Positions 2,011 to 32,530 of a stretch of DNA of 37,574 nucleotides are shown one piece after another (within the stretch, counting starts at the first letter, position 1; the number at the start of each line of letters is the position of its first letter). The DNA lies in contig NC_068985.1 in the NCBI RefSeq assembly GCF_001194135.2, forward strand, positions 55,381,958-55,419,531, read 5' to 3'. The notes under the pieces are model-generated. The model was given only the letters and a program-made list of their open reading frames with translations. It ran no database searches and was not told the DNA's origin. Source of the stretch: Octopus bimaculoides. Its lineage: Eukaryota. The translations under genes were made by a program, and so were the position numbers.

Positions 2011-3599
2011 GCATACAACTCCTCTTTATAGGAAATGCTTGGTATGTTTTTGTTTTATCCGTATTCTCACAGTTAATCCTTTTGATACCAACCTGTCAAA
2101 GTCTACTCGTAGTTCCATTATACAAAATTCATGTTTTGAAATAAACTAAATAAAAAATTGCCATAAAAATTTTATATTAATTTATGATTCAAATACGACT
2201 TAATCTTGATAATATTAAAACTCTAGGGATGTTTGTGTGTAACTGAAATATCTCAGAAATAGTATATTTTATCTTAATTTTTTTTTACATATTTATTATC
2301 ATACTTACCTTCGGCAGTGCAGTACAAATTTTTGTGACCTTTGAATTTCTATTTAAACAATTAAACAAGTTTTGTTATTTCTTGATGAAAAAAATACATG
2401 GCTTCCATGATGTCAACACAAATACAGAATACACACATATATAATGAATGTCATGGCTTGTCAATCAACACAAACACACACATTGTCTTCGCGCTCTCTA
2501 AGAAAAAAGACCGTTGACATTTTGACGCACACAATATTTTAATCATTTGTATTTCGTCTGTCTTTATGGTCTGGGTTCAAATTCCACTGTTGTCGACTTT
2601 GCTTTTCATCCTTTCGGAGTCGATAAATTAAGTACCAGTTGCGTCCTGGAGTCAATCTAATCGACTGGCCCCCTCACCCCAAAATTTAGGGTCTTGTGCC
2701 TAGAATAGAAAAGAATATTTTAATCATTTAGAAATATTTTTAACTGAATATGATTTCATCATCCGGAGTTCGTTAATTTCCGTAAAAAATTTTTTATTTA
2801 TTTACTTTTGTTTTAAACTGGAAGATGTATGTACGTGTATATGGGATCTTTATGAAATGTATGTATATGAAATGAACATGTGAGTATGTGAAAGAGAGAG
2901 AGAGAAAGAGAGACAGAGTGAATGAAGGGGTGTGTTGTCATGTATAGGTACATACTTCAGTACATATGCATACATCTTTTTTTGTATGTACGTGGGCATG
3001 TGTGTGTGTGTGTGAGAGAGAATGTGTGTGTGTGTGAGTGAGTGAACATGTGTGTTCTCATGTATGTGTAAGTGGCACACACACTATCTCTCTCTCTCAC
3101 ACACACACACATCCATTTCATTTACACGGTCATACATCATTCACTTTCTCCTCTCTTTCAATTTAAAACAAAAGTAACAGGTGATTTTCAGGATAAAAAT
3201 TGTTTAAAAAAAAGCCTTCTACTCATGTAAATTGATTACTATTGTTCGAATAGTTACAGTTAAATAAGTTCAGAAGTTAGGTTAAATATATATACATGCA
3301 CAAGTACCGTGAATTCCCATTCTATACACTGGCAAATAATTCCGTGAATACTTTATCAGGCAAGGCTGGATAGTAAGTCTAGTAATGACTAAATTTTTCA
3401 GTATTTTCCAAATTAATTAAAACAACATTTCAACAGAAATCTGACAATAAAGAGGATTATAATTACAAAGTTATTTTACTAACTTCTTCATTATTTTCAA
3501 AATCAATTAAATGAAAAGCAGTGTATTTCAACAAAAATATTGAACAACTGATTTTCAAGGGATGCTATTCTACAAAATAAAAGAAGTGCCATGTTTTAT

Positions 3600-14459: not shown

Positions 14460-14497
<38 letters not shown>

Positions 14498-14589
14498 TGT
14501 TAATTGTTTTAGTTTGTATATCTTCATTTGTCTTGCTCATTTTTACATTCTGGCATTTGCTGAAATTTTTCTTGAGAATACACTCTTCA

Positions 14590-14975
14590 TGGTAAGGTGA
14601 TTTTACATCTGTTTTTAGCATATTAGGAATCCACTTTCCAAATGCAATGCTTCCCTTCTCTATTTGATAGTATGTCTCTGCATTAAGACTACCATCTCTT
14701 GACAGTGTGCTTCCAAGGTAAACAAAGGTGTCAATGACTTCTAACCTTGTTCTATTCACAAAAATATTTGGTTCAGAATATGTTTGTCATGACACAGGTG
14801 TAAACATTACTTTGGTTTTCCCGAGCCTAATTGTGAGTCCAAAATGTACACATGCAGTGGAAAATCTGTCCATTAAATGTTGCATGTCCCCTTCTGAGTG
14901 TGCCAACAAATCAGTATCATCAGCATAAAGTAATTCTCTAACAAATATTTTGAAAATCTTTACTTTGCAGTTAAT
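14590..14975 (-). mobile_element. RTE LINE reverse transcriptase fragment
   Basis: VRELLYADDTDLLAHSEGDMQHLMDRFSTACVHFGLTIRLGKTKVM contains the YADD motif; frameshifted continuation LEVIDTFVYLGSTLS. Confidence 0.9.
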
Positions 14976-15117
14976 GTTTGGCTTTAGAAGCTTTTCATGA
15001 GTGGACCTCTTTGTTGCTAAAAGCTCATTTATCACTGTATTATTGGAATAAAAACAGTGTTGGTGCTGTCTTCTATTAAAACCTAACATCTCTGATCCTG
15101 AAAAGATTGCCATGAAC

Positions 15118-15234: not shown

Positions 15235-16470
15235 ATAAACACTGAAAATGTGCAGAAAACAGCTTCTGTCACATGCCAGGGGGAAAAACTAGAAGTAGTT
15301 GATAGCTTCCACTACCTAGGTGACCAAGTCAGTAGCGGGGTGGATGCTCTGAGAGTGTAGCTACTAGAATAAGAATAGCCTGGGCAAAGTTTAGAGAGCT
15401 CCTACCTCTGCTAGTGACAAAGGGCCTCTCGCTCAGAGTAAAAGGTAGACTGAATGATGCATGTGTGCAAACAGCCATGCTAAATGACAGTGAAACATGG
15501 GCTGTGACTGCTGAGGATATGCGTAAGCTTACAAGAAATGAAGCTAGTATGCTCCGCTGGATGTGTAATGTCAGTGTGCATACACGACAGAGTGTAAGCA
15601 CCCTGAGAGAAAAGTTGGATTTAAGAAGCATCAGATGTGATGTGCAAGAGAGACGACTGTGCTGGTATAGTCATGTGTTGCAAATGGATGAGGACAACTG
15701 TGTCACACCTTAGCAGTAGAGGGAACTTGTGGAAGAGGTAGACCCAGGAAAATCTGGGATGAGGTGGTGAAGCACAACCTTTGAATGTTGGGCCTCACGG
15801 AAGTGATGACGAGTGACGGAGACCTTTGGAGATATGCTGTGCTTAAGAAGACCCGGTAAGCCAAATGTGACCATAACCATGGCCTATGCCAGTGCAGCAT
15901 AACCAGCTCATTTAAGAGTACCCTTCAATCATTGGGCAATAAACTGTGCTTGCGAAAACCTGTTGAGTCAAGTGAAATCATTGCCGTGGTCGATGCCAGT
16001 ACTGCCTGACTGGCACCCGTGCTGGTGGCATGTAAAAAGCACAATTTGAGCATGGTCGATACCAGAGCTGCCTGAATTGTCCCATGCCGGTGGCATGTAA
16101 AAAGAACCATTTGAGCATGGTTGAAGCCAGTGCCGCTGGACTGGCTCCTGTGTTGTTGGCACATAAAAAGTACCATTCGAGTGTGGTCGAATGTGACTGC
16201 CTGACTGGCTCCTATGCTGGTGGCACATAAAAAGCACCATTCAAGTGTTGTCAATGCTCAGTACTACCTAACTGGCTCTCGTGCCGGTGGTGCATAAAAT
16301 GCACCCACCATACTCTCAGAGTGTTTGGTGTTAGGAAGGGCATCCAGCTGTAGAAAACTTGCCAGATCAGATTGGAGCCCAGTACAGCCTTCTGGCTTGG
16401 CAGTTCTCAGTCAAACTGTCCAACCCATGCCAGCATGGAAAGCAGATGTTAAATGACGATGATGATGATG
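15235..16470 (+). mobile_element. 5'-truncated RTE LINE with tandem-repeat 3' UTR and (GAT)n tail
   Basis: LEVVDSFHYLGDQV, RVKGRLNDACVQTAMLNDSETWAV, MLRWMC, GRGRPRKIWDEVV motifs; five ~65-bp units; ends GTTAAATGACGATGATGATG. Confidence 0.9.
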
Positions 16471-16684
16471 ATACATACATACATACATTCATATATGTAT
16501 ATTAAATAAATACTACACAGAAAGCAACTGTACATATAAATAGATAGAGCAGAGAAGTTGGTTTTTATTGATTAAACTTGGAGAGGCTACCAGGATTAAA
16601 GATTGATTAAATGGTTCCTACTGGTTGTGTGACATAATTGGATTTTGTGTGGGAGGTAGTCATATTATAGATAGGTTCTTTTTA

Positions 16685-17110
16685 AGGGTTAAAACAAATA
16701 TTGAAGGGAAGACTATATGAAGCTTACATGAAATGTCTGATAGTGTATAGCAGAGAAATATGGGTTATGAATGTAGAAGATGTACAGCAGAAAGAAAGGA
16801 ATGAAAAGGCAGAAAAGGCGGCGAGCTGGCAGAAACATTACCCCGAAATGCTTAGCAGTATTTCGTCTGCCGGTACATTCTGAGTTCAAATTCTGCCGAG
16901 GTCGACTTTGCCTATCATCCTTCCGGGGTCAATAAATTAAGTACCAGTTACGCATCGGGTGTCGATGTAATCGACTTAATCCCTTTGTCTGTTCTTGTTT
17001 GTCCCCTCTATGTTAAGCCCCTTGTTGGCAATAAAGAAATAAGAAAGAAAGGAATGACTCCTGTACTGTGCATTGTTAATTTACATGAAAGATTAAATAC
17101 TACTGATTTG
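16685..17110 (+). mobile_element. Old RTE fragment interrupted by a SINE (16805-17041) with a 16-bp target-site duplication
   Basis: KGRLYEAYMKCLIVYSREIWVMNVEDVQ before the SINE; AGAAAGAAAGGAATGA at 16789-16804 and 17042-17057. Confidence 0.8.
16805..17041 (+). mobile_element. tRNA-derived SINE family B; other copies ~2555-2712, 5428-5600, 17428-17640, 30915-31130, 32765-32970, 32975-33150 (+) and 35895-36000 (-)
   Basis: GAGTTCAAATTC B-box then GTCGACTTTGCC..TCATCCTT..GGGGTC.ATAAA..AAGTACCAG; this core resembles the Meta/MESC SINE domain as I recall it (assignment unverified). Confidence 0.85.
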
Positions 17111-17321
17111 AAGTGATTAATAAGATGTAATTAATGGATGTTGATGACTACAAGAATGAGAAAATACATCTAGGGATGTCTGGTTTAACACTGCTATGAG
17201 GTATCCTGTGTGCCTTTAACAAGCCAGTCTGTTGTATTTGGGTTAGGCTTCCAGTTTGCACATTCCTTCTGCTCTCCCTTCCAAGAGTATTGGAGATTCC
17301 AGAAATGGTCATGGGCACTAC

Positions 17322-17334
17322 CTACTCCCTGGAC
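17322..17334 (-). CDS. Candidate 13-nt micro-exon (V-QGS-R)
   Basis: Strong acceptor TTTTTTATCTTTTAG|; AG|GTAGTG donor; phase 1 to 2. Confidence 0.3.
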
Positions 17335-18033
17335 TAAAAGATAAAAAATATATATTGGATGTTGATAGAGGAAAATTTGGGTTGTAGGGAAATGTCTATG
17401 GGTAGCAGTTAATATTGTGTTATAAAAAGGTGGTTAGCTGGCAGAATCATTAGCACACTGGGCAAAATGCTTAGCAACATTTCATCTGTCTTCATGTTCT
17501 GAGTTCAAATTCTGCTGAGGTCAACTTTGCTTTTCATCCTTTCGGAGTCAATAAAGTAAGTACCAGTTGAACACTGGGGTCAATGTAATCAATTTAACCC
17601 TTCCCCCGAAATTGCTAGCCTTCTGCCAAAATTTGAAAATGATATTGGGTTATAAGGTTGACATTTGTGCTATAGTGTAAATATTTGAGATACAGGGTGA
17701 GCATTTGGGTTAAAAAGGGTACTTTGAGTTTGAGGGAGAACATCTGGGTTATCTGGAGAACATTTGGGCTATGGGATCAATAGTTAAGCAAAAATGGCTA
17801 ATATCTAAGTTATAGGGTTCATACATTAATTATAAGACAGCATTTAGGGTATAAGATTGAGAAATATAACGAAGATACCACATTACAGATCTATATTACT
17901 GCATGGAAAAAAAAAAAAAACTAAACTGGCATTGTTAATGAAGATGAAGTTGTTTTGCTGTTGTTGTTGATGATGAGGATGAGCAGGGTGAGGAGTGGAG
18001 GTTGATGTAGTTAGGTGTCAAAATCTCACTCAC

Positions 18034-18099
18034 CCTTGGAAAATGTTCTCCACACTAAGTTGTCTCTCCACATGAAGACGTCATTGTCAACACAATATG
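18034..18099 (-). CDS. Candidate internal exon (x-YCVDNDVFMWRDNLVWRTFSK)
   Basis: CAACAG| acceptor; consensus AAGG|GTGAGT donor; 66 nt; only phase 1 is open; protein-like composition within otherwise repetitive DNA. Confidence 0.6.
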
Positions 18100-18404
18100 C
18101 TGTTGCGTAATTATTAACAGACAAGGCTATCTTTAGAAATCACCTCTCACAAGGCGATGTTGGGGAAGAGTCACCTATGTGGTTCCTTGATTTGCCAGGA
18201 TTAGCAGCTAAATCTCTCTAAACACAATGTTTTATCATCTTAAAAAAGGGACATGCTGGCTTATGTGGTCCTGGATCTCTGTGCATAAGAAAACAACAAG
18301 ATGGTCATGGCTGGATTGCTTTTGATCATAGGCCAACTGGATTACAGTTGACCTGTGGAGGGTGTATGTGTCAAATGATGATATCACCATCAACAACATC
18401 CTAC

Positions 18405-18550
18405 ACAACTATTACTACTACAGCACCACCATCACTGCCGCCACCACCACCACTAACACCGCCACCACAACAACAGCTGCTGCTGCTGCTAATACTACTA
18501 CTACTACTACTACTACCACCACTACCACCACCACTACCACCACTACCACC

Positions 18551-18609
<59 letters not shown>

Positions 18610-18610
18610 A
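18405..18610. repeat. Compound trinucleotide microsatellite (CAC/CTA/CAG); similar mosaics at ~19280-19360, 25950-26125 and 30108-30420
   Basis: Visible directly; source of the poly-T, poly-V and poly-L pseudo-ORFs. Confidence 0.95.
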
Positions 18611-18745
18611 TCTTCACTGGTTAGTTTACATTTTTGATTAGAAGTACAGTACTCAGGTGGGTTAGAACTCAAATAAAGTTGTCATCAATGTTATGTCACA
18701 CAACCACAGAACCACCATAAAACTGTTCTGCATTGATTAGATATT

Positions 18746-19117
18746 GTGGAGGCGCAATGGCCCAGTGGTTAGGGCAGCGAACTCGCAGTCATAGGATCGC
18801 GGTTTCGATTCCCAGACCGGGTGTTTATTGAGCTAAAACACGTAAAGCTCCACGAGGCTCCGGCAGGGGATGGTGGCGAACCCTGCTGCATTCTTTCACC
18901 ACAACTTTCTCTCACTCTTACTTCCTGTTTCTGTTGTACCTGTATTTCAAAGGGTCAGCTTTGTCACACTGTGTCACGCTGAATATCCCCGAGAACTATG
19001 TTAAGGGTACACGTGTCTGTGGAGTGCTCAGCCACTTGCACGTTAATTTCACGAGCAGGCTGTTCCGTTGATCAGATCAACTGGAACCCTCGACGTCTTA
19101 AGCGACGGAGTGCCAAC
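18746..19117 (+). mobile_element. Near full-length tRNA-derived SINE (family A); partial copies at 972-1104(-), ~4700-4950(+), 6384-6550(+), 14262-14450(+), 37508-37574(-)
   Basis: A-box TGGCCCAGTGGTTAGG and B-box GGTTTCGATTCCC; shared body GCCTTGTCACACT...GTCACGCTGAA and tail GACGGAGTGCC. Confidence 0.88.
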
Positions 19118-19457
19118 TGATTAGATATCAATATTTATTGACAATTGTAACAACAATAATGGCAATAACGGTCATAGAATCAGTATATGTTCCACCCCCA
19201 TCACCTCTGTCACATGTATCAGCCACAAGAACTGCATCAGCAGCAGCACTGTATGCTCCGCCTGGTACATATATTGACAACAACAAGAGCAGCAGCAGCA
19301 ACAAGAGCAGCAGCAGCAACAACAGCAGTAGTAGGTACAACAGAAGCAGCAACAGTAGTTATTTGTCATTCTCATTATAAACACCCAATCTTCATACTTC
19401 ACTGCCAGAGAAACACCACCACCATCAAAACTATCACCACCACTGCCAAGTCCAGAT

Positions 19458-19512
19458 ATGATGAAACTTTGTGCTGTAGTGATGTTCATCACTTTCCTGC
19501 TCCACCGGGAAG
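19458..19512 (+). CDS. Exon 1 of candidate secreted CTLD-like/PAN-like protein (signal peptide MMKLCAVVMFITFLLHRE-G)
   Basis: First ATG after an in-frame upstream TAG; Lys then hydrophobic core; consensus donor GAAG|GTAAGT at 19513; ends phase 1, matching the phase-1 start of the exon at 26214. Confidence 0.7.
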
Positions 19513-20214
19513 GTAAGTCATAAACTAGCTGTCATCTTGATTACATCCACCCACAATCACATGCACACACAAACACAAATATACACACATAGTTATATTT
19601 AGAAGGTATCCAACAATTGTAGAAATATTTCAAAACCATAATATAGGCACATATGGATATATCATCATCATCATCATTGTCATTGTTTTCACGTTTGTCT
19701 TTCGATGGTCAGACAGAATTTTGTCAATCAGACAAAGAAACAATAACACACACACACACACACATCTATCTATCTATCTATCTATCTATAGATAGATAGA
19801 TATACAGATAACAAGCTTCTTTCAGTTTCTCTCTACCAAATCGACTTACAAGGTTTGGTGAGCCTAAGGCTATAGCAGAAGACATCTGCCCAAAGGGTCA
19901 CATAGTGGAATTGTACCCAGAACCATGTGGTTGGAAGGCAAACTTCTAACCACACAGCCACACCTGTGTTTATACACTCAGACACACACACACACACAAA
20001 CACACACACACGTATGTATGTGTGTGTGTATCATCATCATGATCATCATCATTTAACGTCCGCTTTCCATGCTGGCATGGGTTGGACGGTTTGATTGAAA
20101 ACTAGTAAGCCAGGGAGCTGCACCAGGTTCCAATCTGATTTGACAAGGTCTCTATGGCTGGATGCCCTTCCTAACATCAACAACTCCAAGAGTGTAGTGG
20201 GTGTTCCTCATGCC

Positions 20215-21141
20215 ATTCAGTAACAGCTGTGTGAATTGGTGCATTATCACTCTGAAAGGTTGCGTTTCTCTCCAGAAACAGTTTCGCAACCATAGAATGA
20301 ATTTGATCAGATAAAATGCTTAAATAGTTTTGACTATCAATTCTGCCAAGATTTAGACCCTCCCCCCCGCCAGATCATCACAGATCCTCCTCTATGTTTA
20401 ACAGTTGGAAGAAGGCAGTCTGGGTCAAATGCTTCTTTTAGCTGTCTCCACATGTACACCCAACCGGTGGTCAGAAATAAGGTAAAGGGCGACTCGTCTG
20501 AGAAAATAACATTCTTCCACTGCTCTAGAAACCAATTTTGTAGGTTTTTACTTTACTCTAAATGCTTTGCAACGTTTGTTTTTGAAAGTAGTGGTTTTCT
20601 GATTGCAGCCCTCCCATGAAATCCGGTTTTATGCAGCTCCTGGTGAACAGTTTTTGTGGAAACTGGGTTCTCGAGGTGGTCATTAAGCTCTGCAGTAATT
20701 TTGGGAACTGTACATTTGTGATCCTTTCTAACAATTCGCGTAAGAGTCCAATGGTCCTTATCTGAAAGTTTTGGTTTTCTTCTTGAGTTTTGTTTTGATG
20801 AGGAGGTTTTTTCCTCTTTATCAAAGACTGTCATTACTTTCGAGACAGTACTTCTTAATACACCAAACATTTCGGCTGTTTTCGTTACACTAGCATCTGC
20901 CATATGAGCACCAACAATTTGACCTCTTTGAAAGTCCGATAAATCTGTCATTTTAATGAATTTTAATTACCTTTTTGTAATGATATCTGAAAAGAAACAG
21001 CAATTTTAGCAAAACATATTAAGCAACACCAATAATAGATTAAAAAAACATTAAAATAAACATGCTTTTCACAGTTTTATAGATATTTTAAAATTATGAT
21101 GCTATGATGATAGGTGTTTCCATTATTTTGTCCAACCCCTG
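20215..21141 (-). mobile_element. Truncated Tc1-like (DD34E) transposon
   Basis: TA|CAGGGGTTGGACAAAATAATGGAAACAC left end at 21141; ORF 20951-20553 MTDLSDFQRGQIVGAHMADASVTKTA... continues with VIFSDES, TVKHRGGSVMIW and FQSDNAPIH. Confidence 0.9.
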
Positions 21142-21369
21142 TATACACAAGAGTGTATGCAAAACTGTTCTACTTTTGTTTTTCATTCCCATTTCTACAA
21201 CAATAAAGATACAGCTAACCATTTTATCTGCGGAGTGTATATTTGTAAATATGATTTTATGTATGTTCCAAACACACACATGTATATGTGTGTGTGTGTA
21301 TATGTATGTATTTGGATGCCTGGGTGCAAGCACACACACACACACACACATGCAGAGCAATATACTATA

Positions 21370-21600
21370 TTTTTTTATTCTTTCACTCGTTTCAGTCATT
21401 TGATTTTCACCATGCTGGAGCACCATCTTAAAGGATTTTTAGTCATAGAAATTGACCTCAGGACTTATTCTTTGTAAACCTGGTATTTATTCTATTGGTT
21501 TTTTTTTTTTTGCTGAACCACTAAGTTACGGGGACGTAAATACACTGACATAGGTTGTCAAACGATGGTGGCAGGGACAAACACAGACAGAAACACACAA
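21370..21600 (-). mobile_element. Short interspersed repeat family D; + copies ~4295-4485 and 35460-35630
   Basis: Shared GGTGCTCC.GCATGG...AATGACTG.AA and GATAGAATAA...CCAG..TTA segments. Confidence 0.6.
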
Positions 21601-21889
21601 ATATATACATACAGTGGCAGACTGGCCAGGTTGCCAGCTTGGCTGATAGCAAGTTGGCCCCTACACCATTAGAATCCATACATGGGGGCCCATGTTAGTA
21701 TCTAAGGGGCCCATCTCCTCAAGTTTGAGAATTTTTTATATATATATATATATTTATGCCGTATTTACATTTAGTGGCTCTCTCATTTATGTGCGTGTGT
21801 GCAAGTATGCACTAATTTTCCTTATATCTTTATTTATGTATTTATTTATTGAATTGCATTTTGGGAAAAGATTTGAAAAATATGAATTA

Positions 21890-22095
21890 TCCATGTGACA
21901 TGTGAGTGTGTATACATATATGTGTATGTATATGTATATATGTGTGTGTGTATATATATGTATATGTATGTGTATATATGTGTGTATATATATATATATA
22001 ATGTTTGTGTATGTGTATGTATATATGTGTGTGTATATGTATGTGTATGTGTATGTGTGTGCATGTATGTATATATATCATCATCATCATCATCA
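21890..22095. repeat. Compound (TA)n/(TG)n microsatellite; similar tracts at ~185-325, 2990-3110, 5810-6210 (GA-rich), 8833-8886 (CTCA), 9800-10310 (CT-rich), 11070-11160
   Basis: Visible directly. Confidence 0.95.
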
Positions 22096-23463
22096 TCGTT
22101 TAACGTCTGCTTTTCATGCTAGCATGGGTTGGACGATTTGACTGATGACTGGCGAACCAGATGGCTACGCCAGGCTCCAGTCTCATTTGGCAGAGTTTCT
22201 ACAGCTGGATGCCCTTCCTAACACCAACCACTCCGAGAGTGTAGTGGGTGCTTACATATATATATATATATATATATGTATATTTGTGTTTATGTATATA
22301 ATATCGAGTGGAAATAGGGAGTGCTGCAGTTCCACAGTGCCTATACATGAGCTGCCACTGGATGGAAGTGTCCTCAAACTGAAGACCTGGTCCAAATGTT
22401 TATAACAGAGTGGACTCTGCTAAAGACACTCACTGTCTCACATGGTAGTGTTTAACTGGACAATGCATTAAGCCTGCAATCCAAAGATTAAGTCATTATT
22501 CAAGTCAATTATGTGAGGATTAAGTAAATCATCCTAGGGTTAAATCACCTGTCTTTCCCACCACCATCTTAATAAATTTAGATACAGTCATTGTTTTTCA
22601 AGTTTATTTGATAAAACAGCAACAAAAAGGACAATTTTAATGACCTCTTTATTTGTTGAACAAATGTCCTTTCCTCTCCGGTTATACAAACAATATGGTG
22701 GAAATAAAATCCATTGTCAAATGTGATAATGCTTTGTTGGTCAACCAAAGAAGAAAATCAAAGACAATGTTAAAAACCAAACCAAACAATACATTGTTTC
22801 TCACTCATCTAATCCAAACCTCTGTATCATCTCACTTATTCTCACCCCGCCCCAAATGTCCCTCTAGGATATGTCCCAATACAGTCACCAACTCTCTCAC
22901 TATCATTTTCTTTGTCTTACTCTCTGACTCATCTGCTCTCTTTATCTTACTAATTCACTTCCCTTTCCTTTCCAACTGGGGTATCATGTATCTACTCTAA
23001 AGCAAGATACTTATCTCTGTCCCTCTATACCTGAAATCTCTCAACTGGCACAAAGCCAACCACCCTCAATACTAATCCTCACTCCTAGTCAAAGGGTCCA
23101 ACCTAAGCCAACATGGAAGAACGGATGTTAAATGATGATGATGATGATGAAACATATGCTTGATAGGTAATCTGTCAATCTATAAGTACTTCCTATCCTA
23201 TTCATATCCTTCTTCAGTACTTTCTATATAAATGACTATAATAATTTAATTGTCTATCTTCTATACTTAGAAGACACTCAATGTCATAAGAGTGAGCTTC
23301 CTTATCACCATATTGGGTTCCTTTATTGTATACTTAGAAGCTGCAGACGTGATTGTATTGCTAAGAAGTTAGCTTCCCAACTACATGGTTTTGGTCTCAT
23401 GGTGTGGCACTTTGGGCAAGTGGATTTTACTATAGATTTGGACCAACGAAAGCCTTGTGATAT

Positions 23464-23502
<39 letters not shown>

Positions 23503-23749
23503 NNNNNNNNNNNNNNNNNNNNNNNNNNNNNNNNNNNNNNNNNNNNNNNNNNNNNNNNNNNNNNNNNNNNNNNNNNNNNNNNNNNNNNNNNNNNNNNNNN
23601 NNNNNNNNNNNNNNNNNNNNNNNNNNNNNNNNNNNNNNNNNNNNNNNNNNNNNNNNNNNNNNNNNNNTCAGTTTTTTGAGATCATTTGTATGAATTTAGA
23701 AAATATGTAGCTCTTCAAAGAAAAATTATATTTGAAAGGAAATTGGCAC

Positions 23750-24738
23750 AGATAATCTTGATAATCTTTTAATGGCTGGTTCAATACAAGGTTGGAAGTG
23801 TTGACATACCTGAATCAGGTGACCTTTATCAATTTTGGATATAGTGCTGGTAATAGTGGGTTTTAGAGATGTTATGGGGGGGGGGGGAAGTGTGGACTGA
23901 TCTCTCTCTTGATTACACCCCATATGTACTAATTCAGTGGATTGAGGTCTGGTGAGCTAGGAGGTCATGTGTCTGGGAGAACATGATCATGGAGACTGGC
24001 ATGCATCCATGCTTGATTTGTTGTAGCCTTATGGGCAGAAACTAGTTGGAAGACATATGGTCTTCCATTGCATACTCTGTCTATCCAAGGCTTCACAACT
24101 TTCTCCATACCTCTGTGTAGACAGCAGAATTAACTCTTAAACCTTGTGCAAAAAGTGTGGTGATTTGAAATTTCCATTGTTGCTGATGACTCCCAGACCA
24201 TCACAGTTGTTGGGAACTTAGTATACATGACTGTTGAAACCTCATTTCGGTCTCTGCATAACCATCTGTCATTCCTTCAGTTTACTTTTTGGTCCTGACT
24301 GAAATATTTTTCCATCAGAAAAAACCCAAAATATTCCAACCTCTTGGAATTTTAATGTGTTTAGTAAGTGCTTTGCACAGATTGAATGATTCTCTCTTGT
24401 CTCATCCAGTATATACTGACACCCTCCATATCACATATATCTTGTACAGGATGTCCTCATGCACAACTCTTCTGATGGAGCATTTTGAAACCTTGAGCTC
24501 TGATTGACTCTCTGGAGTTTTTTTATCAATCATTTCTTGGACTTTTTGCACAAAGTTATGTGTTCTGATCATATTAGGATCTTGTGCATATGTTTTGCAT
24601 TTAGCTGTTGATGTTGGATCCCTGTCAGCAGCTTCTAGTTCTTTTCAGTTTTTGATAACAAAGGATCGGGCAACTTTGAGGACTCTTTGTATCACTATGT
24701 TGCACTTTTAAGGTGACGATTACAGCATGCCTTTCCAT
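23750..24738 (-). mobile_element. Decayed maT/DD37D-type mariner-like transposase
   Basis: Frameshifted translation with IRRVVHEDI, KPWIDRVCNGRPYVFQ, PPSSPDLNPLN*YIWG, CQHFQPCIEP. Confidence 0.75.
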
Positions 24739-25157
24739 ATGCTGAGTTAACCTGATGTCTGACATTATTTATCTGAAAAGTAATTTTAAAAAATTAAGTT
24801 AGAAGAAAGAGCTCTTGAAAGAGCTGTCCTCAAAAAATGGATGTACACTGTGCATAAAAAACCCAGCACATGGTGCAAAAATATTTATAAACAAAACATT
24901 CAAACAGTAAGGTTTGAAATGAGATGTCACTACTGTTAATATCATCTGTGGATAAAATTTAAAATTGATGGTACCAGCAGTAGCGTCTGATATCTTGGTG
25001 CTTTACGGTGGTTTAATTAAGACTTTAGCTCTTATTTCTAGCAGGTTGATGCTTTTCTGCATTCTTACACTTCGTGCTAATTTGTATATTATAGCTAAAT
25101 AATACTATTTGCTTGTGAACCACTTATGTTACTACTGTGAATGTATATATATACATA

Positions 25158-25392
25158 CAGGGTTACCCGAAAGTAGGTTTACAGTTACCACATAGCCAAT
25201 TTAAATTTCTTTTAAAACGTTTTATCATATTTAAATTTCTATCTTTCAAACTGAAAAGGGAGCTAGACAAAATTAACTAAATTAGCGTAGAATAATGGTT
25301 TCATATTATTTTATAATTAAGATCTAAACTGTTAATATATGAATGCGAAAGAGATAGTTGAATAACTGTAAACCTATTTTTGGGCCACCCTG
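25158..25392. mobile_element. 235-bp Tc1/mariner-type MITE
   Basis: ~30-bp imperfect TIRs (CAGGGTTACCCGAAAGTAGGTTTACAGTTA and CAGGGTGGCCCAAAAATAGGTTTACAGTTA) with TA on both flanks. Confidence 0.88.
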
Positions 25393-25402
25393 TATATATA
25401 AA

Positions 25403-25430
25403 CTAGCAGTATAACCCGACGTTGTCCGGG
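25403..25430 (-). mobile_element. Helitron-like 3' terminus
   Basis: - strand reads CCCGGACAACGTCGGG hairpin, 8 nt spacer, then CTAG followed by T; 5' end not identified. Confidence 0.55.
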
Positions 25431-26213
25431 TGTGACTTATTACGCCATCTACGATAAGTCTTGCTAGGTGAAAATCAACTAAAAAAGAAAGCCTTACAAT
25501 GAAAAAACCCTTATGATGTAAATATGTTCATAATTCAAAAGACGAAATTAATAGGGAAAGTCTGAAGGCTGAAATTAATTTTTCTAATTCTTCCTTTTCT
25601 TGATGTACTTCAAACAACACTAAAAGAAACAAAATCTTCAAAACAATTTGGTTCTTGCTGCTGCTAGGATTCCTTTAAAATTAGAGATTTATGGTTTCCA
25701 CATTGGTCACCCTACATCAAGGTTCTTTCTTTCATTTTTTAAAATTGAAATAAGTTTATCAGTGGATCAAGGTATGAATACATTTGATCTCTGAGAGTCA
25801 TTTTTGAGAGGCAAGAGAAATGTATTTGAAGGGCATCCATTGATAGAAACTATGCTTGAACCAAGACATTGGAGCAGGAAGTGTTCCTCTGGTCCATTGG
25901 ATCCTATCTCACCATCCAACTCATATCAGCATGGAAACAGATTTAATATGATGATAGTGATGATGTTTAATTCAAACAAATCATCATCATCAGCATTGTC
26001 ATCATTATCGATCTCCTTATCATTGTTTTCACCATCATCATCATGTCACCATCATCATCAGTATTGTTGTGGTTACCTTTTTCCTCCTCTTTATCATTGT
26101 CATCTTCATTGTCATTGTCATCATCTACTTTAATATATTGAAAGACTGATTCCTTCTTTCTCTTCATCTCTTTATCTTAATTTTCTTTCTTTTTTTTTCT
26201 GCTGTATTTTCAG

Positions 26214-26314
26214 GAATGGCAGAAATAAAACCCATTTCAATCTCTAGAAATGATTCTCTGGGGGTGATCTACTGGCACTTTCAAATCTTGGAAACCTTAA
26301 ATTCTGCAACACAG
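26214..26314 (+). CDS. Exon 2 (G-MAEIKPISISRNDSLGVIYWHFQILETLNSATQ)
   Basis: Long pyrimidine tract and TTTTCAG| acceptor; ACAG|GTATGA donor; 101 nt, open in phase 1 to 0. Confidence 0.8.
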
Positions 26315-27297
26315 GTATGAAGATATCTTAGTATCTATATCATAACAACATAAATATGAAGAACTCCAACATATAGTTCTATCTACATTGTTTTAATCTT
26401 TGAAATGGCCTTCAAGACAAATATGTCGAAGATGTCATGTATATTTGGAATTGCGTCACATACGAAGAATATTGGTTAGCAGCAGTTAAGACATATTAAA
26501 ATATATAAACAGACAAGCAATAATTAGTAGCTCCATGACATCAGTTTAAATAGTGTGTGACAGAAAAAGCTCCCATAGTTTACAGTAAAGTTATATAGGT
26601 AATAATAGTGTCTTCATGTAGCTCATGTTTTATAGTTATTTTTTTTCAGTTACCATAATGGTTAACCCTTTAGCATTCAGTTTATTCCTGTGTCAAATCT
26701 AATGCTTATTGATTTACAATCTTTTGAATTAAAGCAGTATTGTGTAGCTTTGCTTTTGAGCAAGTATGATGAGCAAGTGGTTCTATGGTGAATACAATGA
26801 TCCGACTTCAAGTCTTGGTAGAACCTATTTTATTTTGTGAAGGCACATGGTTTGTGGCTTGAGTGTCAGGCTCACAGTCATGAGGTAGTAAGTTCAATTC
26901 TGGGACTGGACAGTGTGTTGTGTTCTTGAGTAAGACGCCTTATATCACATTGCTCCAGTTCACTCAGCTGTAGAAATGAGTTGTGATGTCACAGGTACCA
27001 AGCTGTATCAGCCTTTGCTTTTCCTTGGATAACATCAGTGGCGTCCAATCCCAGTGGCATCCAATCATTCATGACTGATGGGGGGTCTTTTGCCCTTGAT
27101 TATGTAGCTTCGTGATTTTGCTGAAGTGATTGTATATTTTTAGAATGACATTGTAGGGTAGGTATGAGAGGCTGAATCTGGCCAGTTTGAACATAGAACA
27201 GAGCAGAACATTTGGGCCTGAGGAGGGTGGTTTAAATGATAGTGCACACTATGTATTTGCACTTGATCACTCCAGTTTTCTTTCAGGTATAAACATG

Positions 27298-28211
27298 CTC
27301 ACTCTGCTAGCAATGTGCACCAAAGGAGAACAGAGATCAATGATCTGATTTCTCTGGTCAGAAGGTGTGTTAGGGGCTGACATTCATTGCAGACTTTCAG
27401 TACAATATGGGGTCAGCACTCTGCCACTTAGAGGTGTGTATGAGTGGATTGAGAAGTTTAAAAGACAAACATGAAGCACAAAGCGAGAGCAAGACATCCA
27501 TCAAACTCCACCACTGATGTAAGAATCAACAAACCTGAGAGGTGGTTCTGGTGAACAAACGAGTAACCATCAATGAAGTGGTATGTTATTTGCATATTAG
27601 TCACAGTTCTGCATACAAAATCATCCATGACAAGCTTTGCTTCTGTAAAGTCTGTGTGAGGTGGGTGCCATGAGAGATTACTGAATCGCACAGTCATGTG
27701 GAGATCTGTCAATGCTTACTCAGCTGCTGCAATGATGAAGGTAAAGCTTTTTTGGAGAGAATAGTCGCAGGAGATGAGCCTGGGGTCCATCACTTTGAAC
27801 CAGAATCCTAAAGGCAATGTATGGAGTGGAAACACCTGAAATTGCCAGCGAAGAAATTCCACAGAAAAATTGATGCCAACTGTTTTTTGAGATGCAAAAG
27901 GGCCTATACTGGAGCTTTACCTGGAAAGGGGGTCTAGAGTCACTTGTGTAGGCTACAGTGAAATGTTGGTCAGCAAACTGAAATTAGCAATTCACACTAA
28001 ACACAGAGGTCTATTGTCAAAGCAAGTGTCATTGTTGCATGACAGTGCATGCCCACAAGGTCGTCAATTTGCTATGGATGAAGAAGTGCAGCAAGTACTG
28101 CATAAATGGCCACGCAATCAGCCCCAAACCTTCTTCTCTGATGGAATAAGCAAGCTTGTGGAGGACTGGAAAAAGTGCATTGAAAAACAAGGAGACTATG
28201 TTGAAAAATAA
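27298..28211 (+). mobile_element. Decayed mariner transposase in intron 2 of the + strand gene
   Basis: KVCVRWVP, IVAGDEPGVHHFEPES, LLHDSACP and WKKCIEKQGDYVEK* motifs; internal deletion. Confidence 0.88.
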
Positions 28212-28413
28212 TGTAATTGTTCAACCGCCTGCTTTTCTTTTAATAAATCACAGAAAGAAGAGTGCATATAATTTTTGACTTACTTTGACTTACATATATG
28301 CATGTATGTATGTGTGTTTTATGTTTGTTGATGAATTCTTTAGTATGAATTCATGTAATCTTTTAAGGGAAATTTATAATCCAGCAAGATCTCATATTCT
28401 GCTGTTTTTACAG

Positions 28414-28486
28414 ATTTGTCAGGAATATGGAATGACACTGTTTAGTATAAAGCGCCACAAAACCAGTTTCATGGAACTTTTACTGG
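28414..28486 (+). CDS. Exon 3 (ICQEYGMTLFSIKRHKTSFMELLL-D)
   Basis: TGTTTTTACAG| acceptor; TGG|GTATGT donor; 73 nt, phase 0 to 1; pattern A-x-x-x-C-x-x-x-G-x-x-L-x-S-I resembles helix 1 and the following strand of C-type lectin domains. Confidence 0.8.
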
Positions 28487-29199
28487 GTATGTAGCAAATA
28501 TTTTATTCACAATTCTTCTTCAGTCATTGTTGTCATCATTGCCACCATCACTGTGGCTGTTGTCATTCTTTGGGCACAGGTCAGTCCTGATCAAGCAAAC
28601 CTATGATCAAAGATTTTTCCTGTGTATCACAGAATATCCAGGATTACATTCATCAGTTTTACCTTCCTTAATTTTTAAGACAGTATAGTATGTTTTGAGG
28701 GAGATTTGGCTGCTATTTTCAGAAGAATGACTTACCATTTAGAGACTTGGCATTATGAAGGGCATCCAGTTGTAGAAACCATGCTAGAACAGACATTATA
28801 CTTTGATATAGCTCCACAACTCATTGGATCCTATCAAACCATTTACCTCATGATAGCATGGAAAACACACACACATATATATATATATATGCAACAGAGG
28901 CAGTATTAATACAGAGAAGTAATATTTATCCCCACTTAAACATGGATGTTCTATTAGAACAAACTATACTGCAGCAGTTATCCTGAGAGAAAATCTCATA
29001 TTGGCTATTTGGTGCCAACTGCATTCTTCTTTATATTGCTAGCAGGGAATATGCAAAATTAGTTTATTATTAAGAAACAGGAAAAAAGAGAGTTAAAAAA
29101 GGAAAAAAAAGTGTGTGTGTGTTTGGGGGAAGCAACAGAAAATGGAGGGGGTGGGGTGATGGGCCACATGCCCAAGAACACATGGCGGGCTCATCCATG

Positions 29200-29427
29200 C
29201 CCTGCAGCAATGACTGTGATGGCATTGCAATAGAGAGAGGCCAGTGACACTCATTGCAGCAGCCATTTTACCCTGCGGGGCTCATTTCTGCAATGGGCTG
29301 TTGTTATCCCTATTTTGTAGAGGAAATCAGTAGTACAGAGTCCTAGAGCACCTGATGTCTTGACAGTGACTGGCACAAACTGATGCCATGTCTGAAGAAG
29401 TATCACTGTTTTACTAAAGTCTAGAAA
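29200..29427 (-). mobile_element. CRE-clade non-LTR retrotransposon relic (restriction-like endonuclease C-terminus)
   Basis: HQFVPVTVKTSGALGLCTTDFLYKIG...EPRRVKWLLQ*VSLASLYCNAI fits the F.P.AVET.G..G.....F...G......EP.E..WL.QR.S.A..RGNA pattern. Confidence 0.7.
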
Positions 29428-29796
29428 TCTGGTAGAATCATCATTTAATGTCCACCTTTCATGCTGGCATGGGTTGGACAAGAGTTGATCAGGCAGGAAC
29501 CAGCACCAGACTTCTGTGTCTGTTTTGGCAGGGTTTTTATGGCTGGATTCCCTTCCTAGCACCAACCATCCTGCAGAATGGACTGAGTGCTTTTTACATG
29601 ATACAAGCACAGGCGAGGTCAATTTTGGCATGGTTTTTACAGTTGGATGCCCTTCTAAATGCCAACCATTTTACAGTGTGGACTGAAAAAAAGGGAAGCA
29701 GTTAAACTTTAACCATTGTTAAAATCTTTACTGTTTGACAGATATAACTTGATATATAAAGATATAAATATTTGTTTTCTCAATGATTTCTTGCAG

Positions 29797-29883
29797 ACAA
29801 AGTTCGGAAATTTATAGAAGGCAGCAAAGGACAAATAATGTTGGAGGCTTTTGTTTGTCAACGACATTTGGAACATGAAAATG
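29797..29883 (+). CDS. Exon 4 (D-KVRKFIEGSKGQIMLEAFVCQRHLEHEN-D)
   Basis: TTTCTTGCAG| acceptor; ATG|GTAAGT donor; 87 nt, phase 1 to 1; FVCQ resembles the terminal F-x-C motif of CTLDs. Confidence 0.8.
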
Positions 29884-30475
29884 GTAAGTAACATATAACA
29901 ATGGTTAATCTTTGTTTGTCAGATGCTGAGAATATGGAAATAGTGAAACTTAATATTAGTTAATCTTTGTCAAAGACAAACAAATATGAGAATATTTGGA
30001 ATATGGAAGTGGCACCAAACAACAAAAGTGACATACTACAATAGAATACTACCTGATGCCATAATGATATTAAAGGGATATTTTACAGTATCAGAAGAAA
30101 AATAATATCACCACCACCACCACCACCACCACCAATAACAACAATATCAACACCAGCATCACCAGCAGCAGCACTACTAGCTACAGCAGCAGCAGTACTA
30201 CTAGCTACAGCAGCAGTAGCAGCACCACCACTACTACCGCCAGCATCAACACCTGCACCAGCAGCAGCAGCACCACCACTACCACCACTACTGCCACCAG
30301 CACCTGCACCACCACCGTTCCCACAACTGCTGCCATCACCACCACCACAACCACCATTGCTACTATCTCACCACTAGCATCCCTCACCACTGCCGCTGCC
30401 AACGTCACTACCAGCAACACTATCTTATTTGTAAATATCCCAGTGAAGTCAATACTTTTGTCCCTATCTTTACAG

Positions 30476-30690
30476 ATTACTTTCATCGGACTGAAGAGAT
30501 TGAAGTCTGCGCTGAAGCATTACAAAGTGTTAGAGGAAACCATTTCCAGTGTGCATTCTATTGCAGCATCACTAAAAATTGTGTACTTTACTGTTTATCT
30601 TCTCACGTGTGTTTTCTGTATTCTAAATGTACTGGAACCTGCCCCAAGATGGCATGTCTGAAGAAGCATCATTGTTTCGCTAAAGTCTAG
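30476..30690 (+). CDS. Exon 5, terminal, Cys-rich PAN/apple-like (D-YFHRTEEIEVCAEALQSVRGNHFQCAFYCSITKNCVLYCLSSHVCFLYSKCTGTCPKMACLKKHHCFAKV*)
   Basis: TATCTTTACAG| acceptor; phase-1 frame open for 70 codons to TAG at 30688-30690; 10 Cys including C-x3-C-x5-C-x9-C-x-L spacing as in PAN/apple modules. The 3' end is less certain (see finding on 29382-30693). Confidence 0.7.
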
Positions 30691-30748
30691 AAAAATCCAA
30701 AATGAGATAAAACTGTTTCCTTCAAGATTCATTTGTATCTCAACAAGA

Positions 30749-31511: not shown

Positions 31512-32530
31512 GGTTTATGTGTGCGAACTGCCATGTACATGGCAGTAAAACATAGGCCATGACTGCTGAGGACGTGTAGGCTTGAAAGAAATGAAGCTAG
31601 TATGCTCCACTGGATGTGTAACGTCAGTGTGCATACATGACAGAGTGTAAGCGTCCTGAGAGAAAAGTTGGTTGTAAGAAGCATCAAATGTGGTGTGCAA
31701 GAGAGACGACTGTGTTGGTATGGTCATGTGTTACATATGGATGAGGACAGCTGTATGAAGAAGTGTCACACCCTAACAGTGGAAGGAACCTGTAGAAGAG
31801 GTAGGCCCAGGAAGACTTGGGATGAGGTAGTGAAGCATGACCTTTGAACACTGGGCCTCACAGAGGCACTGACAAGAGACCGAGACCTTTGGAGATATGC
31901 TGTAATTGAGAAGACCCGGCGAGTAAAGTGAGATCACAGCCATAGTTGATTACACTGTTGTATAACTGGCCCATTTAAGAGTACCCTTGAAGCATTGGGT
32001 AATATGATTTGCTTCAGAATCCTGTTGAATCAAGTGAAATTGAAATCATAGTCATGGCCAGTGCTGCCTGACTGGCACCCGTGCTGGTGGCATGTAATAA
32101 GCACCATTTGAGCATGGGTAAATGCTAATGCCACCTGACTGGCTTCCATGCCGGTGACATATAAAAAGCACCATCTGAACATGGTCGATGCCTGTGTCCC
32201 CTGACAGGCTCCCATGCTGGTGGCATGTAAAAAGTACCATCTGAACATGGTCAATGCCAGTGCCCCCTGACTGGCTCCTGTGCTGGTGGCATGTAAAAAG
32301 CACCTTGTGAACATGGTCAATGCTAGTGCCCCCTGACTGGCTCCCATGCTAGCATGTAGAAAGCACCCACTACACTCTCAGAGTGGTTGGCGTTAGGAAG
32401 GATATCCAGCTGTAGAAACTTTGCCAGATCAGATTGGAGCCTAGTGCAGCCTACTGGCTTGCCAGTCCCCAATCAAACCTTCCAACTCATGCTAGCATGG
32501 AAAGCGAACATTAAACGATGATGATGATGA
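31512..32530 (+). mobile_element. Second 5'-truncated copy of the same RTE family
   Basis: Collinear with 15490-16470, including five ~65-bp units and the (GAT)n tail. Confidence 0.9.

What the first reader, a model, noticed from the sequence alone, without database searches (positions are those of the whole stretch)
19458..30690. Hidden five-exon gene for a small secreted protein with a loop-less C-type-lectin-like region fused to a PAN/apple-like module
Seen: five exons with good GT-AG sites whose phases chain exactly (1,0,1,1) into a 176-aa ORF absent from the ORF track: MMKLCAVVMFITFLLHREGMAEIKPISISRNDSLGVIYWHFQILETLNSATQICQEYGMTLFSIKRHKTSFMELLLDKVRKFIEGSKGQIMLEAFVCQRHLEHENDYFHRTEEIEVCAEALQSVRGNHFQCAFYCSITKNCVLYCLSSHVCFLYSKCTGTCPKMACLKKHHCFAKV. 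It has a signal-peptide-like start and no other TM segment. The Cys of QICQ and of FVCQ would form the outer CTLD disulfide, but only 42 residues separate them, with no WIGL, EPN/QPD or WND motifs. Established: canonical CTLDs have a much longer span including the sugar- and Ca-binding long loop; compact CTLDs such as Link modules lack it. Inference: an unusually minimal, probably non-sugar-binding CTLD plus PAN adhesion or recognition protein, possibly lineage-specific. I found no extra phase 1-1 exon in gap-free intron 3.
Basis: partly seen in the sequence, partly recalled or inferred. Interest (0 to 1): 0.7.

Follow-up and report, generated by a model that had tools for sequence, protein, structure and literature searches.

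The report
Annotated octopus half-lectin cysteine-rich gene
The five-exon gene is real, but it is already in RefSeq as an uncharacterised Octopus bimaculoides gene; it encodes a small, probably secreted, cysteine-rich protein that starts like a C-type lectin domain, and the proposed PAN module could not be confirmed.

Summary
The five GT-AG exons give a 531-nt, 176-aa ORF. That ORF is identical to RefSeq XP_014771457.1 (LOC106870011 isoform X1, Octopus bimaculoides), which UniProt auto-names a C-type lectin domain-containing protein. The assembly gap lies in intron 1, after an (AT)n run. Gap-free O. sinensis and O. vulgaris loci carry the same five exons, splice sites and 176-aa length, so no exon is needed from the gap.

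The ORF shows purifying selection overall (dN/dS 0.27, P=2.7e-4). Selection is strong on residues 77-176 (0.10) and nearly absent on residues 20-76 (0.81).

Residues about 34-91 resemble the first half of a C-type lectin-like domain (CTLD), in the same register against two unrelated CTLD families. Pfam Lectin_C gives no hit, and the sugar- and Ca-binding motifs are absent.

The 10-cysteine C-terminal part has no demonstrable homolog. There is no Pfam PAN hit, only a faint motif-level resemblance (P about 0.02). Two AlphaFold runs failed (pLDDT 37).

The 'loop-less CTLD closed by C54-C97 plus PAN' architecture therefore remains a guess. The gene appears restricted to Octopus. Low interest: it is already annotated and simply uncharacterised.

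The parts
19458..19512 (+). Exon 1 (coding part). It encodes MMKLCAVVMFITFLLHRE plus the first base of G19, the signal-peptide-like start.
   Evidence: One search shows ATG with a GT donor at 19513. One search shows an in-frame stop upstream with no earlier ATG, in both O. bimaculoides and O. sinensis. One search gives a mean hydropathy of 2.3 over residues 1-16. One search shows the exon is conserved in O. sinensis (L002 10001-10055).
23503..23667 (.). Assembly gap (165 N) inside intron 1. It is not part of the coding sequence.
   Evidence: Searches show it follows an (AT)n run. One search shows the same gap in GCA_001194135.2. Searches show the orthologous introns are gap-free, with the same exon 1-2 join.
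26214..26314 (+). Exon 2, residues 19-52. It holds the beta1-like strand (VIYWHFQ) and the start of the alpha1-like helix.
   Evidence: Searches confirm the exon and its conservation. Searches align it with CTLD columns. One search shows it is intact in O. vulgaris, although that species' annotation skips it.
28414..28486 (+). Exon 3, residues 53-76 (ICQEYGMTLFSIKRHKTSFMELLL). This is the best CTLD-like stretch and holds the alpha1 cysteine C54 and the beta2 strand.
   Evidence: Searches give the CTLD match. One search shows it is the top hit to CTLD profiles in a six-frame scan of the window.
29797..29883 (+). Exon 4, residues 77-105. It is alpha2-like, followed by GQIMLEAFVCQRHLEHEN, which contains C97.
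   Evidence: Searches confirm the exon. One search gives dN/dS 0.22. Read-through of its donor gives ...HENGK*, the ending seen in an O. vulgaris model.
30476..30690 (+). Exon 5, residues 106-176 plus the TAG stop. This is the region with 10 cysteines and is the most constrained part.
   Evidence: One search confirms the exon. Searches give dN/dS 0.08, with 10 synonymous against 4 non-synonymous changes (P=3.6e-5). Searches find no Pfam or PDB homolog.
2035..2041 (+). Coding end (ATGCTTG|gt) of a distant alternative first exon. It is used by RefSeq isoform X2 (MLGMAEIK...), which skips exon 1 and so lacks the signal peptide.
   Evidence: One search finds this as the only ATGCTNGGTR site upstream of exon 2. 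It coincides with the start of the gene range on record (L001 10001 = window 2035). One search gives the isoform sequence.
29382..29427 (+). Relic in intron 3. It is a 46-nt copy of the last 13 codons, the stop and 3 nt of 3' UTR of exon 5, and it is non-coding.
   Evidence: One search shows 41/46 identical to 30648-30693, with alignment score 31 against at most 13 in 200 shuffles. The O. sinensis copy has a 2-nt deletion.

Best explanation
This is the already annotated protein-coding gene LOC106870011 of Octopus bimaculoides. It is found only in Octopus species among the proteins searched.

Isoform X1 is a 176-aa precursor. Exon 1 supplies a signal peptide. The mature protein of about 155 aa has 12 cysteines.

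Its first part (residues about 34-91) descends from the N-terminal half of a C-type lectin-like domain: beta1, alpha1 with its cysteine, beta2 and alpha2. The long loop, the WIGL core and every Ca/sugar-binding motif are missing or unrecognisable, so it cannot act as a classical sugar-binding lectin.

The rest, mainly exon 5 with 10 cysteines in 56 residues, has no demonstrable relative. It is the part that selection preserves.

Most likely mode of action (inferred, not shown): a small, disulfide-rich, secreted binding protein. Its function would reside mainly in the cysteine-rich C-terminal part, with the half-CTLD acting as a scaffold or a tolerated remnant.
For: Gene and model:
- Exact identity to XP_014771457.1 / UniProt A0A0L8HM99.
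- Isoforms X2 and X3, and O. sinensis X1 and X2, are on record.
- Five exons, eight splice sites, no indels and the same 176-aa length in O. sinensis. All exons are intact in gap-free O. vulgaris.

Coding constraint:
- dN/dS is 0.27 overall, 0.10 for residues 77-176 and 0.81 for residues 20-76.
- Excess of synonymous change: P=2.7e-4 overall and P=2.3e-5 for residues 77-176. Heterogeneity between the two halves: P=0.011.
- Introns carry 4-5 indel events each, the coding sequence none.

Secretion:
- MMK followed by a 12-residue hydrophobic run, then G-M-A.
- An in-frame stop lies upstream of the ATG.

CTLD half:
- The only remote hit among 1.84 billion proteins is a 7-CTLD protein of Polypedilum vanderplanki (E=4.6e-5, six repeats, all hitting residues about 29-68).
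- hhalign pairs query 34-91 with CTLD columns 15-70 of 134 (E=1.2e-4).
- A profile of mammalian CLEC4D alone aligns the same register (18 of 3000 shuffles reach the score). The P. vanderplanki profile is reached by 0 of 3000.
- The second AlphaFold run gives strand-helix-strand-helix at residues 34-83, with its only pLDDT values above 50 there.

Restricted distribution: no other protein at E<=0.001. Cephalopod CTLD repertoires are reported as strikingly small (PMC10140915).
Against: - Pfam Lectin_C gives no hit at E<=10.
- The library E-value of 4.6e-5 sums six near-identical repeats of one protein, so it overstates the independent evidence. A single pairwise match is only E=5e-4.
- Both AlphaFold models are unusable (mean pLDDT 37.0 and 37.4), and Foldseek found nothing.
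- No transcript reads could be examined here.
- RefSeq also lists isoforms without the signal peptide, so part of the output may not be secreted.
- The function is inferred from composition and selection pattern only.
Confidence: 0.6

Rival explanations
1. Residues about 36-100 would be a complete but minimal, loop-less CTLD closed by a C54-C97 disulfide. Residues about 117-176 would be a PAN/apple module.
For: - C54 sits at the alpha1 cysteine position.
- FVCQ resembles the CTLD end motif by eye.
- Exon 5 alone scores 2.7 bits against a plasminogen+HGF PAN profile, reached by 69 of 3000 shuffles. C117, C131 and C141 fall on PAN cysteines, and HFQCAFY falls on FTCxAFxY.
Against: - No Pfam PAN family at E<=10, for the whole protein or the domain alone.
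- No PAN or CTLD chain in PDB by sequence or by fold.
- No alignment method paired FVCQ with the CTLD last strand.
- Ten cysteines in 56 residues, with a repeating C-x3-C-x5 spacing, lets many cysteine patterns match by chance.
- AlphaFold gave neither fold.
Confidence: 0.13
2. One whole but very divergent CTLD spans exons 2-5. C117 and C131 would be the inner cysteine pair, and a later cysteine the partner of C54. A shortened long loop and a cysteine-rich tail would complete it.
For: - hhalign with greedy extension aligns query 36-136 to CTLD columns 3-113 of 117, placing C131 on Cys3 and GNH on WND (E=0.002, probability 13%).
- MAFFT against 16 CLEC4D domains independently places C131 on Cys3.
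- The HMM envelope runs to residues 142-145.
- The protein ends a few residues after a cysteine, as CTLDs do.
Against: - Exon 5 alone shows no signal against any CTLD profile (621 to 2583 of 3000 shuffles reach it).
- The three alignments disagree on Cys2 and Cys4.
- hmmalign leaves everything after residue 71 unaligned.
Confidence: 0.15
3. A precursor of a cysteine-rich peptide. The half-CTLD would be a dispensable pro-region, removed at a basic site such as K65-R66 or R80-K81. The constrained C-terminal part would be the active product, for example a toxin-like, antimicrobial or signalling peptide.
For: - The N-terminal part evolves almost neutrally (dN/dS 0.81) while residues 77-176 are strongly constrained (0.10). 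The difference has P=0.011.
- Basic pairs are present in the sequence.
Against: - No homology to any known peptide family.
- The substitution counts are small.
- There are no expression or proteomic data.
- The constrained block starts inside the CTLD-like alpha2, not after a clean cleavage site.
Confidence: 0.08
4. Not a functional protein gene. It would be a transcribed remnant of a CTLD gene whose ORF survives by recency, or a prediction artefact.
For: - There is only half a recognisable domain.
- Isoforms lack the signal peptide.
- O. vulgaris models skip exon 2 or retain intron 4.
- The N-terminal half is near neutral.
Against: - Significant excess of synonymous change (P=2.7e-4).
- No indels or stops in three species, and all splice sites are kept.
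Confidence: 0.04

Closest known systems
Canonical C-type lectin-like domains (Pfam PF00059 Lectin_C), for example the tandem CTLDs of Polypedilum vanderplanki KAG5666695.1 and mammalian CLEC4D (PDB 3whd)
   Same: They share the order and register of the beta1 strand, the alpha1 helix with its cysteine, the beta2 strand (GMTLFSIK against GMTLFTIK or GAHLATIS) and the alpha2 helix. Both are secreted or extracellular.
   Different: - No Pfam hit.
- No WIGL motif, and only one Trp in the whole protein.
- No EPN/QPD or WND motif.
- The roughly 60-residue second half, with Cys2-Cys4, is not recognisable.
- A 10-cysteine region follows instead.
Compact CTLDs without the long loop (Link module, intimin/invasin D3). 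This comparison rests on my own knowledge of Zelensky and Gready, FEBS J 2005, and was not tested against their sequences.
   Same: They lack the long-loop region and do not bind sugar through the Ca site.
   Different: Those domains still have the full beta-sheet core of about 100 residues. Here only about 58 residues align to any CTLD, and no structure supports a closed compact domain.
PAN/apple domains (plasminogen N-terminal domain 4a5t, HGF N domain 1bht)
   Same: A stretch in exon 5 (C117, HFQC131AFY, NC141VLY) can be laid on the PAN core cysteines and the FxCxAFxY motif.
   Different: - The score is only 2.7 bits, with P about 0.02 by shuffling.
- No Pfam PAN hit.
- The second PAN cysteine is absent in that alignment.
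- Cysteine density is much higher: 10 in 56 residues, against 5 in the 65-column plasminogen/HGF alignment.

Membership tests
C-type lectin-like domain (Pfam PF00059 Lectin_C) | Match to the family profile at or above the curated threshold | tested here: not met
   hmmscan found no family at E<=10 for the whole protein or for residues 22-105 of either species. UniProt's automatic name says 'C-type lectin domain-containing protein', but the basis and coordinates of that name are not visible here.
C-type lectin-like domain (Pfam PF00059 Lectin_C) | N-terminal half: beta1, alpha1 with Cys1, beta2 and alpha2 in canonical order | tested here: met
   - HMMER hit to a 7-CTLD protein, E=4.6e-5.
- hhalign 34-91 against columns 15-70, E=1.2e-4.
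- The CLEC4D-only profile aligns the same register, P about 0.006; the P. vanderplanki profile gives P<3e-4.
- Secondary structure agrees, at low confidence.
C-type lectin-like domain (Pfam PF00059 Lectin_C) | Four conserved cysteines forming Cys1-Cys4 and Cys2-Cys3 | tested here: inconclusive
Cys1 is C54. Candidates for Cys2-4 differ between MAFFT and hhalign alignments.
C-type lectin-like domain (Pfam PF00059 Lectin_C) | WIGL core motif, and the EPN/QPD plus WND Ca/sugar-binding motifs | tested here: not met
   None of these strings is present, and W39 is the only Trp. The best positional equivalents are KFIEG or IMLEA, HEN and GNH, in low-confidence alignments.
C-type lectin-like domain (Pfam PF00059 Lectin_C) | CTLD fold | tested here: inconclusive
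   AlphaFold2 gave mean pLDDT 37.0 with 2 sequences and 37.4 with 18 sequences. Foldseek against PDB found no match at E<=0.001.
PAN/apple domain (Pfam PF00024 and related) | Match to a PAN family profile | tested here: not met
   No Pfam family at E<=10 for the whole protein or for residues 106-176 alone. A plasminogen+HGF profile gives 2.7 bits, reached by 69 of 3000 shuffles.
PAN/apple domain (Pfam PF00024 and related) | Apple fold with its nested disulfides | tested here: inconclusive
   The models are unusable in this region (pLDDT 29-37). There is no PAN chain among the Foldseek or phmmer PDB hits.
Secreted protein (classical signal peptide) | N-terminal n-, h- and c-regions with small residues at -3 and -1, and no other membrane segment | tested here: inconclusive
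   MMK, then 12 hydrophobic residues, then HREGMA with G at -3 and A at -1 before E22. No other window of 11 residues exceeds 1.6 in hydropathy. No signal-peptide predictor was available. Isoforms X2 and X3 lack this exon.

The most novel reading that the evidence does not exclude
An Octopus-restricted secreted protein in which the first half of a C-type lectin-like domain has been joined to a cysteine-rich module of a new kind (10 cysteines, roughly a 10-residue C-x3-C-x5 periodicity). Together they would form a fold not yet seen, with the new module carrying the function. This would be an example of a young gene built from a domain fragment.
Probability: 0.2. Interest if true: 0.45.

Novelty: already known. 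Interest (0 to 1): 0.2.

Why it matters
As a discovery it matters little. The exact protein has been in RefSeq and UniProt since the first O. bimaculoides annotation, with a C-type lectin label.

Its residual value is as a small case study. Cephalopods have unusually few CTLD genes (PMC10140915). This one keeps only half the domain, has lost all sugar-binding features, and is constrained mainly in an orphan cysteine-rich tail. If the protein is expressed and folded, it would show how a domain fragment can be reused in a lineage-restricted secreted protein.

Nothing here makes a long-standing question testable.

Tried and rejected
1. Tandem duplication of the gene. One search seemed to show 91%-identical copies upstream. 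One search showed that the FASTA file held both L001 and the O. sinensis locus L002, so the 'copies' are the ortholog. Rejected.

2. AlphaFold2 with the two-species alignment, and again with 16 CLEC4D sequences added. Both gave pLDDT about 37 and were unusable. Foldseek on the second model gave only noise.

3. Profile searches to deepen the alignment.
- The hybrid alignment A4 returned only the octopus proteins.
- The CTLD alignment A5 returned only mammalian CLEC4D.
- No bridging mollusc sequences were found.

4. A hidden exon restoring a canonical CTLD. A six-frame scan of the whole window with three CTLD profiles found only exon 3. One weak fragment in intron 2 (27988-28146, E=0.24) was judged chance.

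5. An exon in the gap or elsewhere in intron 1. The one conserved block in intron 1 (25247-25402, 94% identical to O. sinensis) has stops in all six frames.

6. An upstream extension of the ORF, as in the O. vulgaris model. This is excluded in O. bimaculoides and O. sinensis by an in-frame stop within exon 1.

7. Literature. No paper in the library mentions LOC106870011, XP_014771457, A0A0L8HM99, LOC115212181 or XP_036358628.

8. Rfam found no RNA family in the window.

Full report
**Observation**

- Each internal exon is preceded by AG after a pyrimidine-rich tract and followed by GTAAGT or GTATG.
- The lengths are 55, 101, 73, 87 and 215 nt, summing to 531 nt.
- C54 and C97 are separated by 42 residues. 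There is one Trp. There is no WIGL, EPN, QPD or WND motif. The only strongly hydrophobic stretch is residues 1-15.

**Identity**

A word-indexed search returned a protein 100% identical over 100% of the length. It is XP_014771457.1, 'uncharacterized protein LOC106870011 isoform X1 [Octopus bimaculoides]'. UniProt A0A0L8HM99 auto-names it 'C-type lectin domain-containing protein'.

The same cluster holds several related records:
- O. bimaculoides isoforms X2 (160 aa, MLGMAEIK...) and X3 (157 aa, MAEIK...).
- O. sinensis LOC115212181 X1 (176 aa, 90% identical) and X2 (157 aa).
- Two O. vulgaris models (CAI9723039 and CAI9723040) that cover the same exons with different 5' ends.

The window equals positions 7967-45540 of locus L001, taken from chromosome CM046605.1 of assembly GCA_001194135.2. 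The gene is therefore not new; it is hidden only from a single-ORF track.

No paper in the held library mentions any of its identifiers.

**The assembly gap**

The N run at 23503-23667 lies in intron 1, directly after an (AT)n microsatellite. It is present unchanged in the chromosome-level assembly. No exon borders it, so the reading frame does not depend on its length.

The remaining risk is an unseen exon. That risk is answered by the orthologs:
- The O. sinensis locus L002 and the O. vulgaris locus L003 have no N runs.
- Both carry the same exon 1 and exon 2 with the same phases, and give the same 176-aa length.
- The only conserved island inside intron 1 (25247-25402) has stops in all six frames.

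**Is it a real coding gene?**

Between O. bimaculoides and O. sinensis, all eight splice sites are conserved. The coding sequence has 34 substitutions and no indel, whereas the flanking introns carry 4-5 indel events each.

Nei-Gojobori estimates:

| Region | dN/dS |
|---|---|
| Whole coding sequence | 0.27 |
| Residues 20-76 | 0.81 |
| Exon 4 | 0.22 |
| Exon 5 | 0.08 |

Significance:
- The excess of synonymous change is significant overall (P=2.7e-4) and for residues 77-176 (P=2.3e-5), but not for residues 20-76.
- The two halves differ (Fisher P=0.011).

The ORF is under purifying selection, concentrated in the C-terminal 100 residues. Direct transcript evidence could not be examined with these tools. 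The existence of several RefSeq isoforms in two species is indirect support only.

**Start of the protein**

Upstream of ATG 19458 there is an in-frame stop and no earlier ATG, in both species. The start is MMK, then 12 hydrophobic residues, then HREGMA, which fits a signal peptide cleaved after A21 by the (-3,-1) rule (inference, no predictor was available).

Isoform X2 starts at ATGCTTG|gt at window 2035-2041, 17.4 kb upstream. It splices to exon 2 and drops the signal peptide.

**The CTLD-like region**

- Pfam gives no family at E<=10 for the whole protein or its halves, and PDB sequences give nothing.
- A full HMMER scan of 1.84 billion representatives found one remote hit at E=4.6e-5. It is KAG5666695.1 of the midge Polypedilum vanderplanki, a 1211-aa protein with tandem Lectin_C domains (Pfam E=3.8e-25).
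- All six matched stretches fall on query residues about 29-68. These align with the start of each CTLD: NSATQICQEYGMTLFSIK against NATNAIKACKSLGMTLFTIK. Because the six repeats are near-identical, this E-value overstates the independent evidence.
- hhalign of the two-species alignment against the repeats pairs query 34-91 with CTLD columns 15-70 of 134 (E=1.2e-4, probability 54%). Those repeats in turn match DC-SIGN, CLEC4D and tetranectin in the PDB.
- As an independent control, a profile built only from mammalian CLEC4D domains aligns the query in the same register. It scores higher than all but 18 of 3000 shuffles. The midge-only profile beats all 3000.

I conclude that residues about 34-91 derive from the first half of a CTLD, with C54 as the alpha1 cysteine.

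**What follows residue 91**

This is unresolved. Three alignments give three answers:

| Method | Result |
|---|---|
| MAFFT with the midge repeats | C151, C166 and C172 on Cys2-4 |
| hhalign, extended greedily | Query 36-136 on columns 3-113; C131 on Cys3, GNH on WND, HEN on EPN (probability 13%) |
| MAFFT with CLEC4D | C131 on Cys3, C151 on Cys4 |

Exon 5 on its own shows no signal against any CTLD profile (621-2583 of 3000 shuffles reach its score).

For the PAN idea, I verified the plasminogen PAN sequence against PDB 4a5t and took the HGF N domain from the printed alignment. I then built a two-sequence profile from them. Exon 5 scores 2.7 bits, reached by 69 of 3000 shuffles, with C117, C131 and C141 on PAN cysteines. 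That is a faint hint, not evidence, and the Pfam PAN families do not hit.

The region has 10 cysteines in 56 residues with spacing C-x13-C-x3-C-x5-C-x3-C-x5-C-x5-C-x3-C-x4-C-x5-C. There is also a weak 10-codon periodicity, with 13-15 of 30 nt shared between the first three units. Many cysteine patterns can therefore be fitted by eye.

**Structure**

AlphaFold2 with the two-species alignment gave mean pLDDT 37.0. With 16 CLEC4D sequences added it gave 37.4. In that run only residues about 46-63, 73-81 and 95-96 lay above 50, with a strand-helix-strand-helix pattern at 34-83. Foldseek against the PDB gave no match at E<=0.001, and no CTLD or PAN chain.

The models are too poor to count as refutation.

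**No missing exon**

A six-frame scan of the whole window with three CTLD profiles found only exon 3. One weak fragment in intron 2 (E=0.24) was judged chance.

**Distribution**

No other protein in the 1.84-billion library reaches E<=0.001. Among annotated proteins the gene is therefore confined to Octopus bimaculoides, O. sinensis and O. vulgaris. Cephalopod CTLD repertoires are reported as strikingly small (PMC10140915).

**Verdict**

The gene model is right and real, but already public. The protein is a small, probably secreted, 12-cysteine protein. Its N-terminal part is a degenerate half-CTLD without any sugar-binding equipment. Its constrained C-terminal part is an orphan cysteine-rich region.

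The specific architecture 'loop-less CTLD closed by C54-C97 plus PAN' is not supported beyond motif resemblance.

My best functional reading is inferred only: a disulfide-rich extracellular binding protein whose function lies mainly in the C-terminal part. Interest is low.

Noticed in passing
window 29382-29427 (+), intron 3; L002 22504-22548: A 46-nt copy of the end of the coding sequence, the stop codon and 3 nt of 3' UTR (41/46 identical to 30648-30693). It sits just upstream of a dispersed repeat. In O. sinensis the copy carries a 2-nt deletion, so it is an old non-coding relic of a partial duplication of the last exon.
   Followed up: partly
window 2035-2041 (+), next to a reverse-transcriptase-like ORF at 1332-1883 (+): The alternative first coding exon of RefSeq isoform X2 lies 17.4 kb upstream of exon 1, about 150 nt downstream of a LINE-like fragment. 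Transcripts from it skip the signal-peptide exon.
   Followed up: partly
L003 (O. vulgaris, OX597818.1) 16573-30498, and proteins CAI9723039/CAI9723040: The O. vulgaris annotation appears to be mis-modelled. It adds a 106-aa N-terminal extension from upstream exons. It skips the intact exon 2 by using an acceptor 29 nt upstream of exon 3 (ARSQILLLLQ). In one model it also retains intron 4 (...HGNGK*). All five exons are intact in the DNA.
   Followed up: yes
window 20553-20951 (-), 13165-13515 (+), 14448-15113 (-), 15414-15713 (+): There are transposon fragments: a Tc1-like transposase N-terminus inside intron 1, a mariner-like DDE fragment, and reverse-transcriptase pieces upstream of the gene. 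Identification is by eye from the ORF translations.
   Followed up: no
window 6947-7085, 15987-16305, 32057-32350: Arrays of a 65-66-bp tandem repeat recur on both sides of the gene and at several places in the O. sinensis locus. This is probably a common octopus interspersed or satellite element.
   Followed up: no
window 25247-25402, intron 1: An isolated 156-nt block is 94% identical to O. sinensis (L002 12572-12727), amid otherwise unalignable intron sequence. It has stops in all six frames. It could be a regulatory element or simply surviving ancestral intron.
   Followed up: partly
window 18489-18609, 19281-19351 and 30146-30356: Long trinucleotide (CTA) and CAG/CAC-type repeats flank exon 1 and fill intron 4.
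   Followed up: no
L001 1-8600 (-), reaching window 1-634; L002 27696-28547 (-): Neighbouring genes: a Translin-family gene (331 aa) lies upstream on the opposite strand. In O. sinensis a single-exon caspase-like ORF (Peptidase_C14, 283 aa) lies 3.9 kb downstream. That ORF has no tblastn match in the window or in L001.
   Followed up: partly
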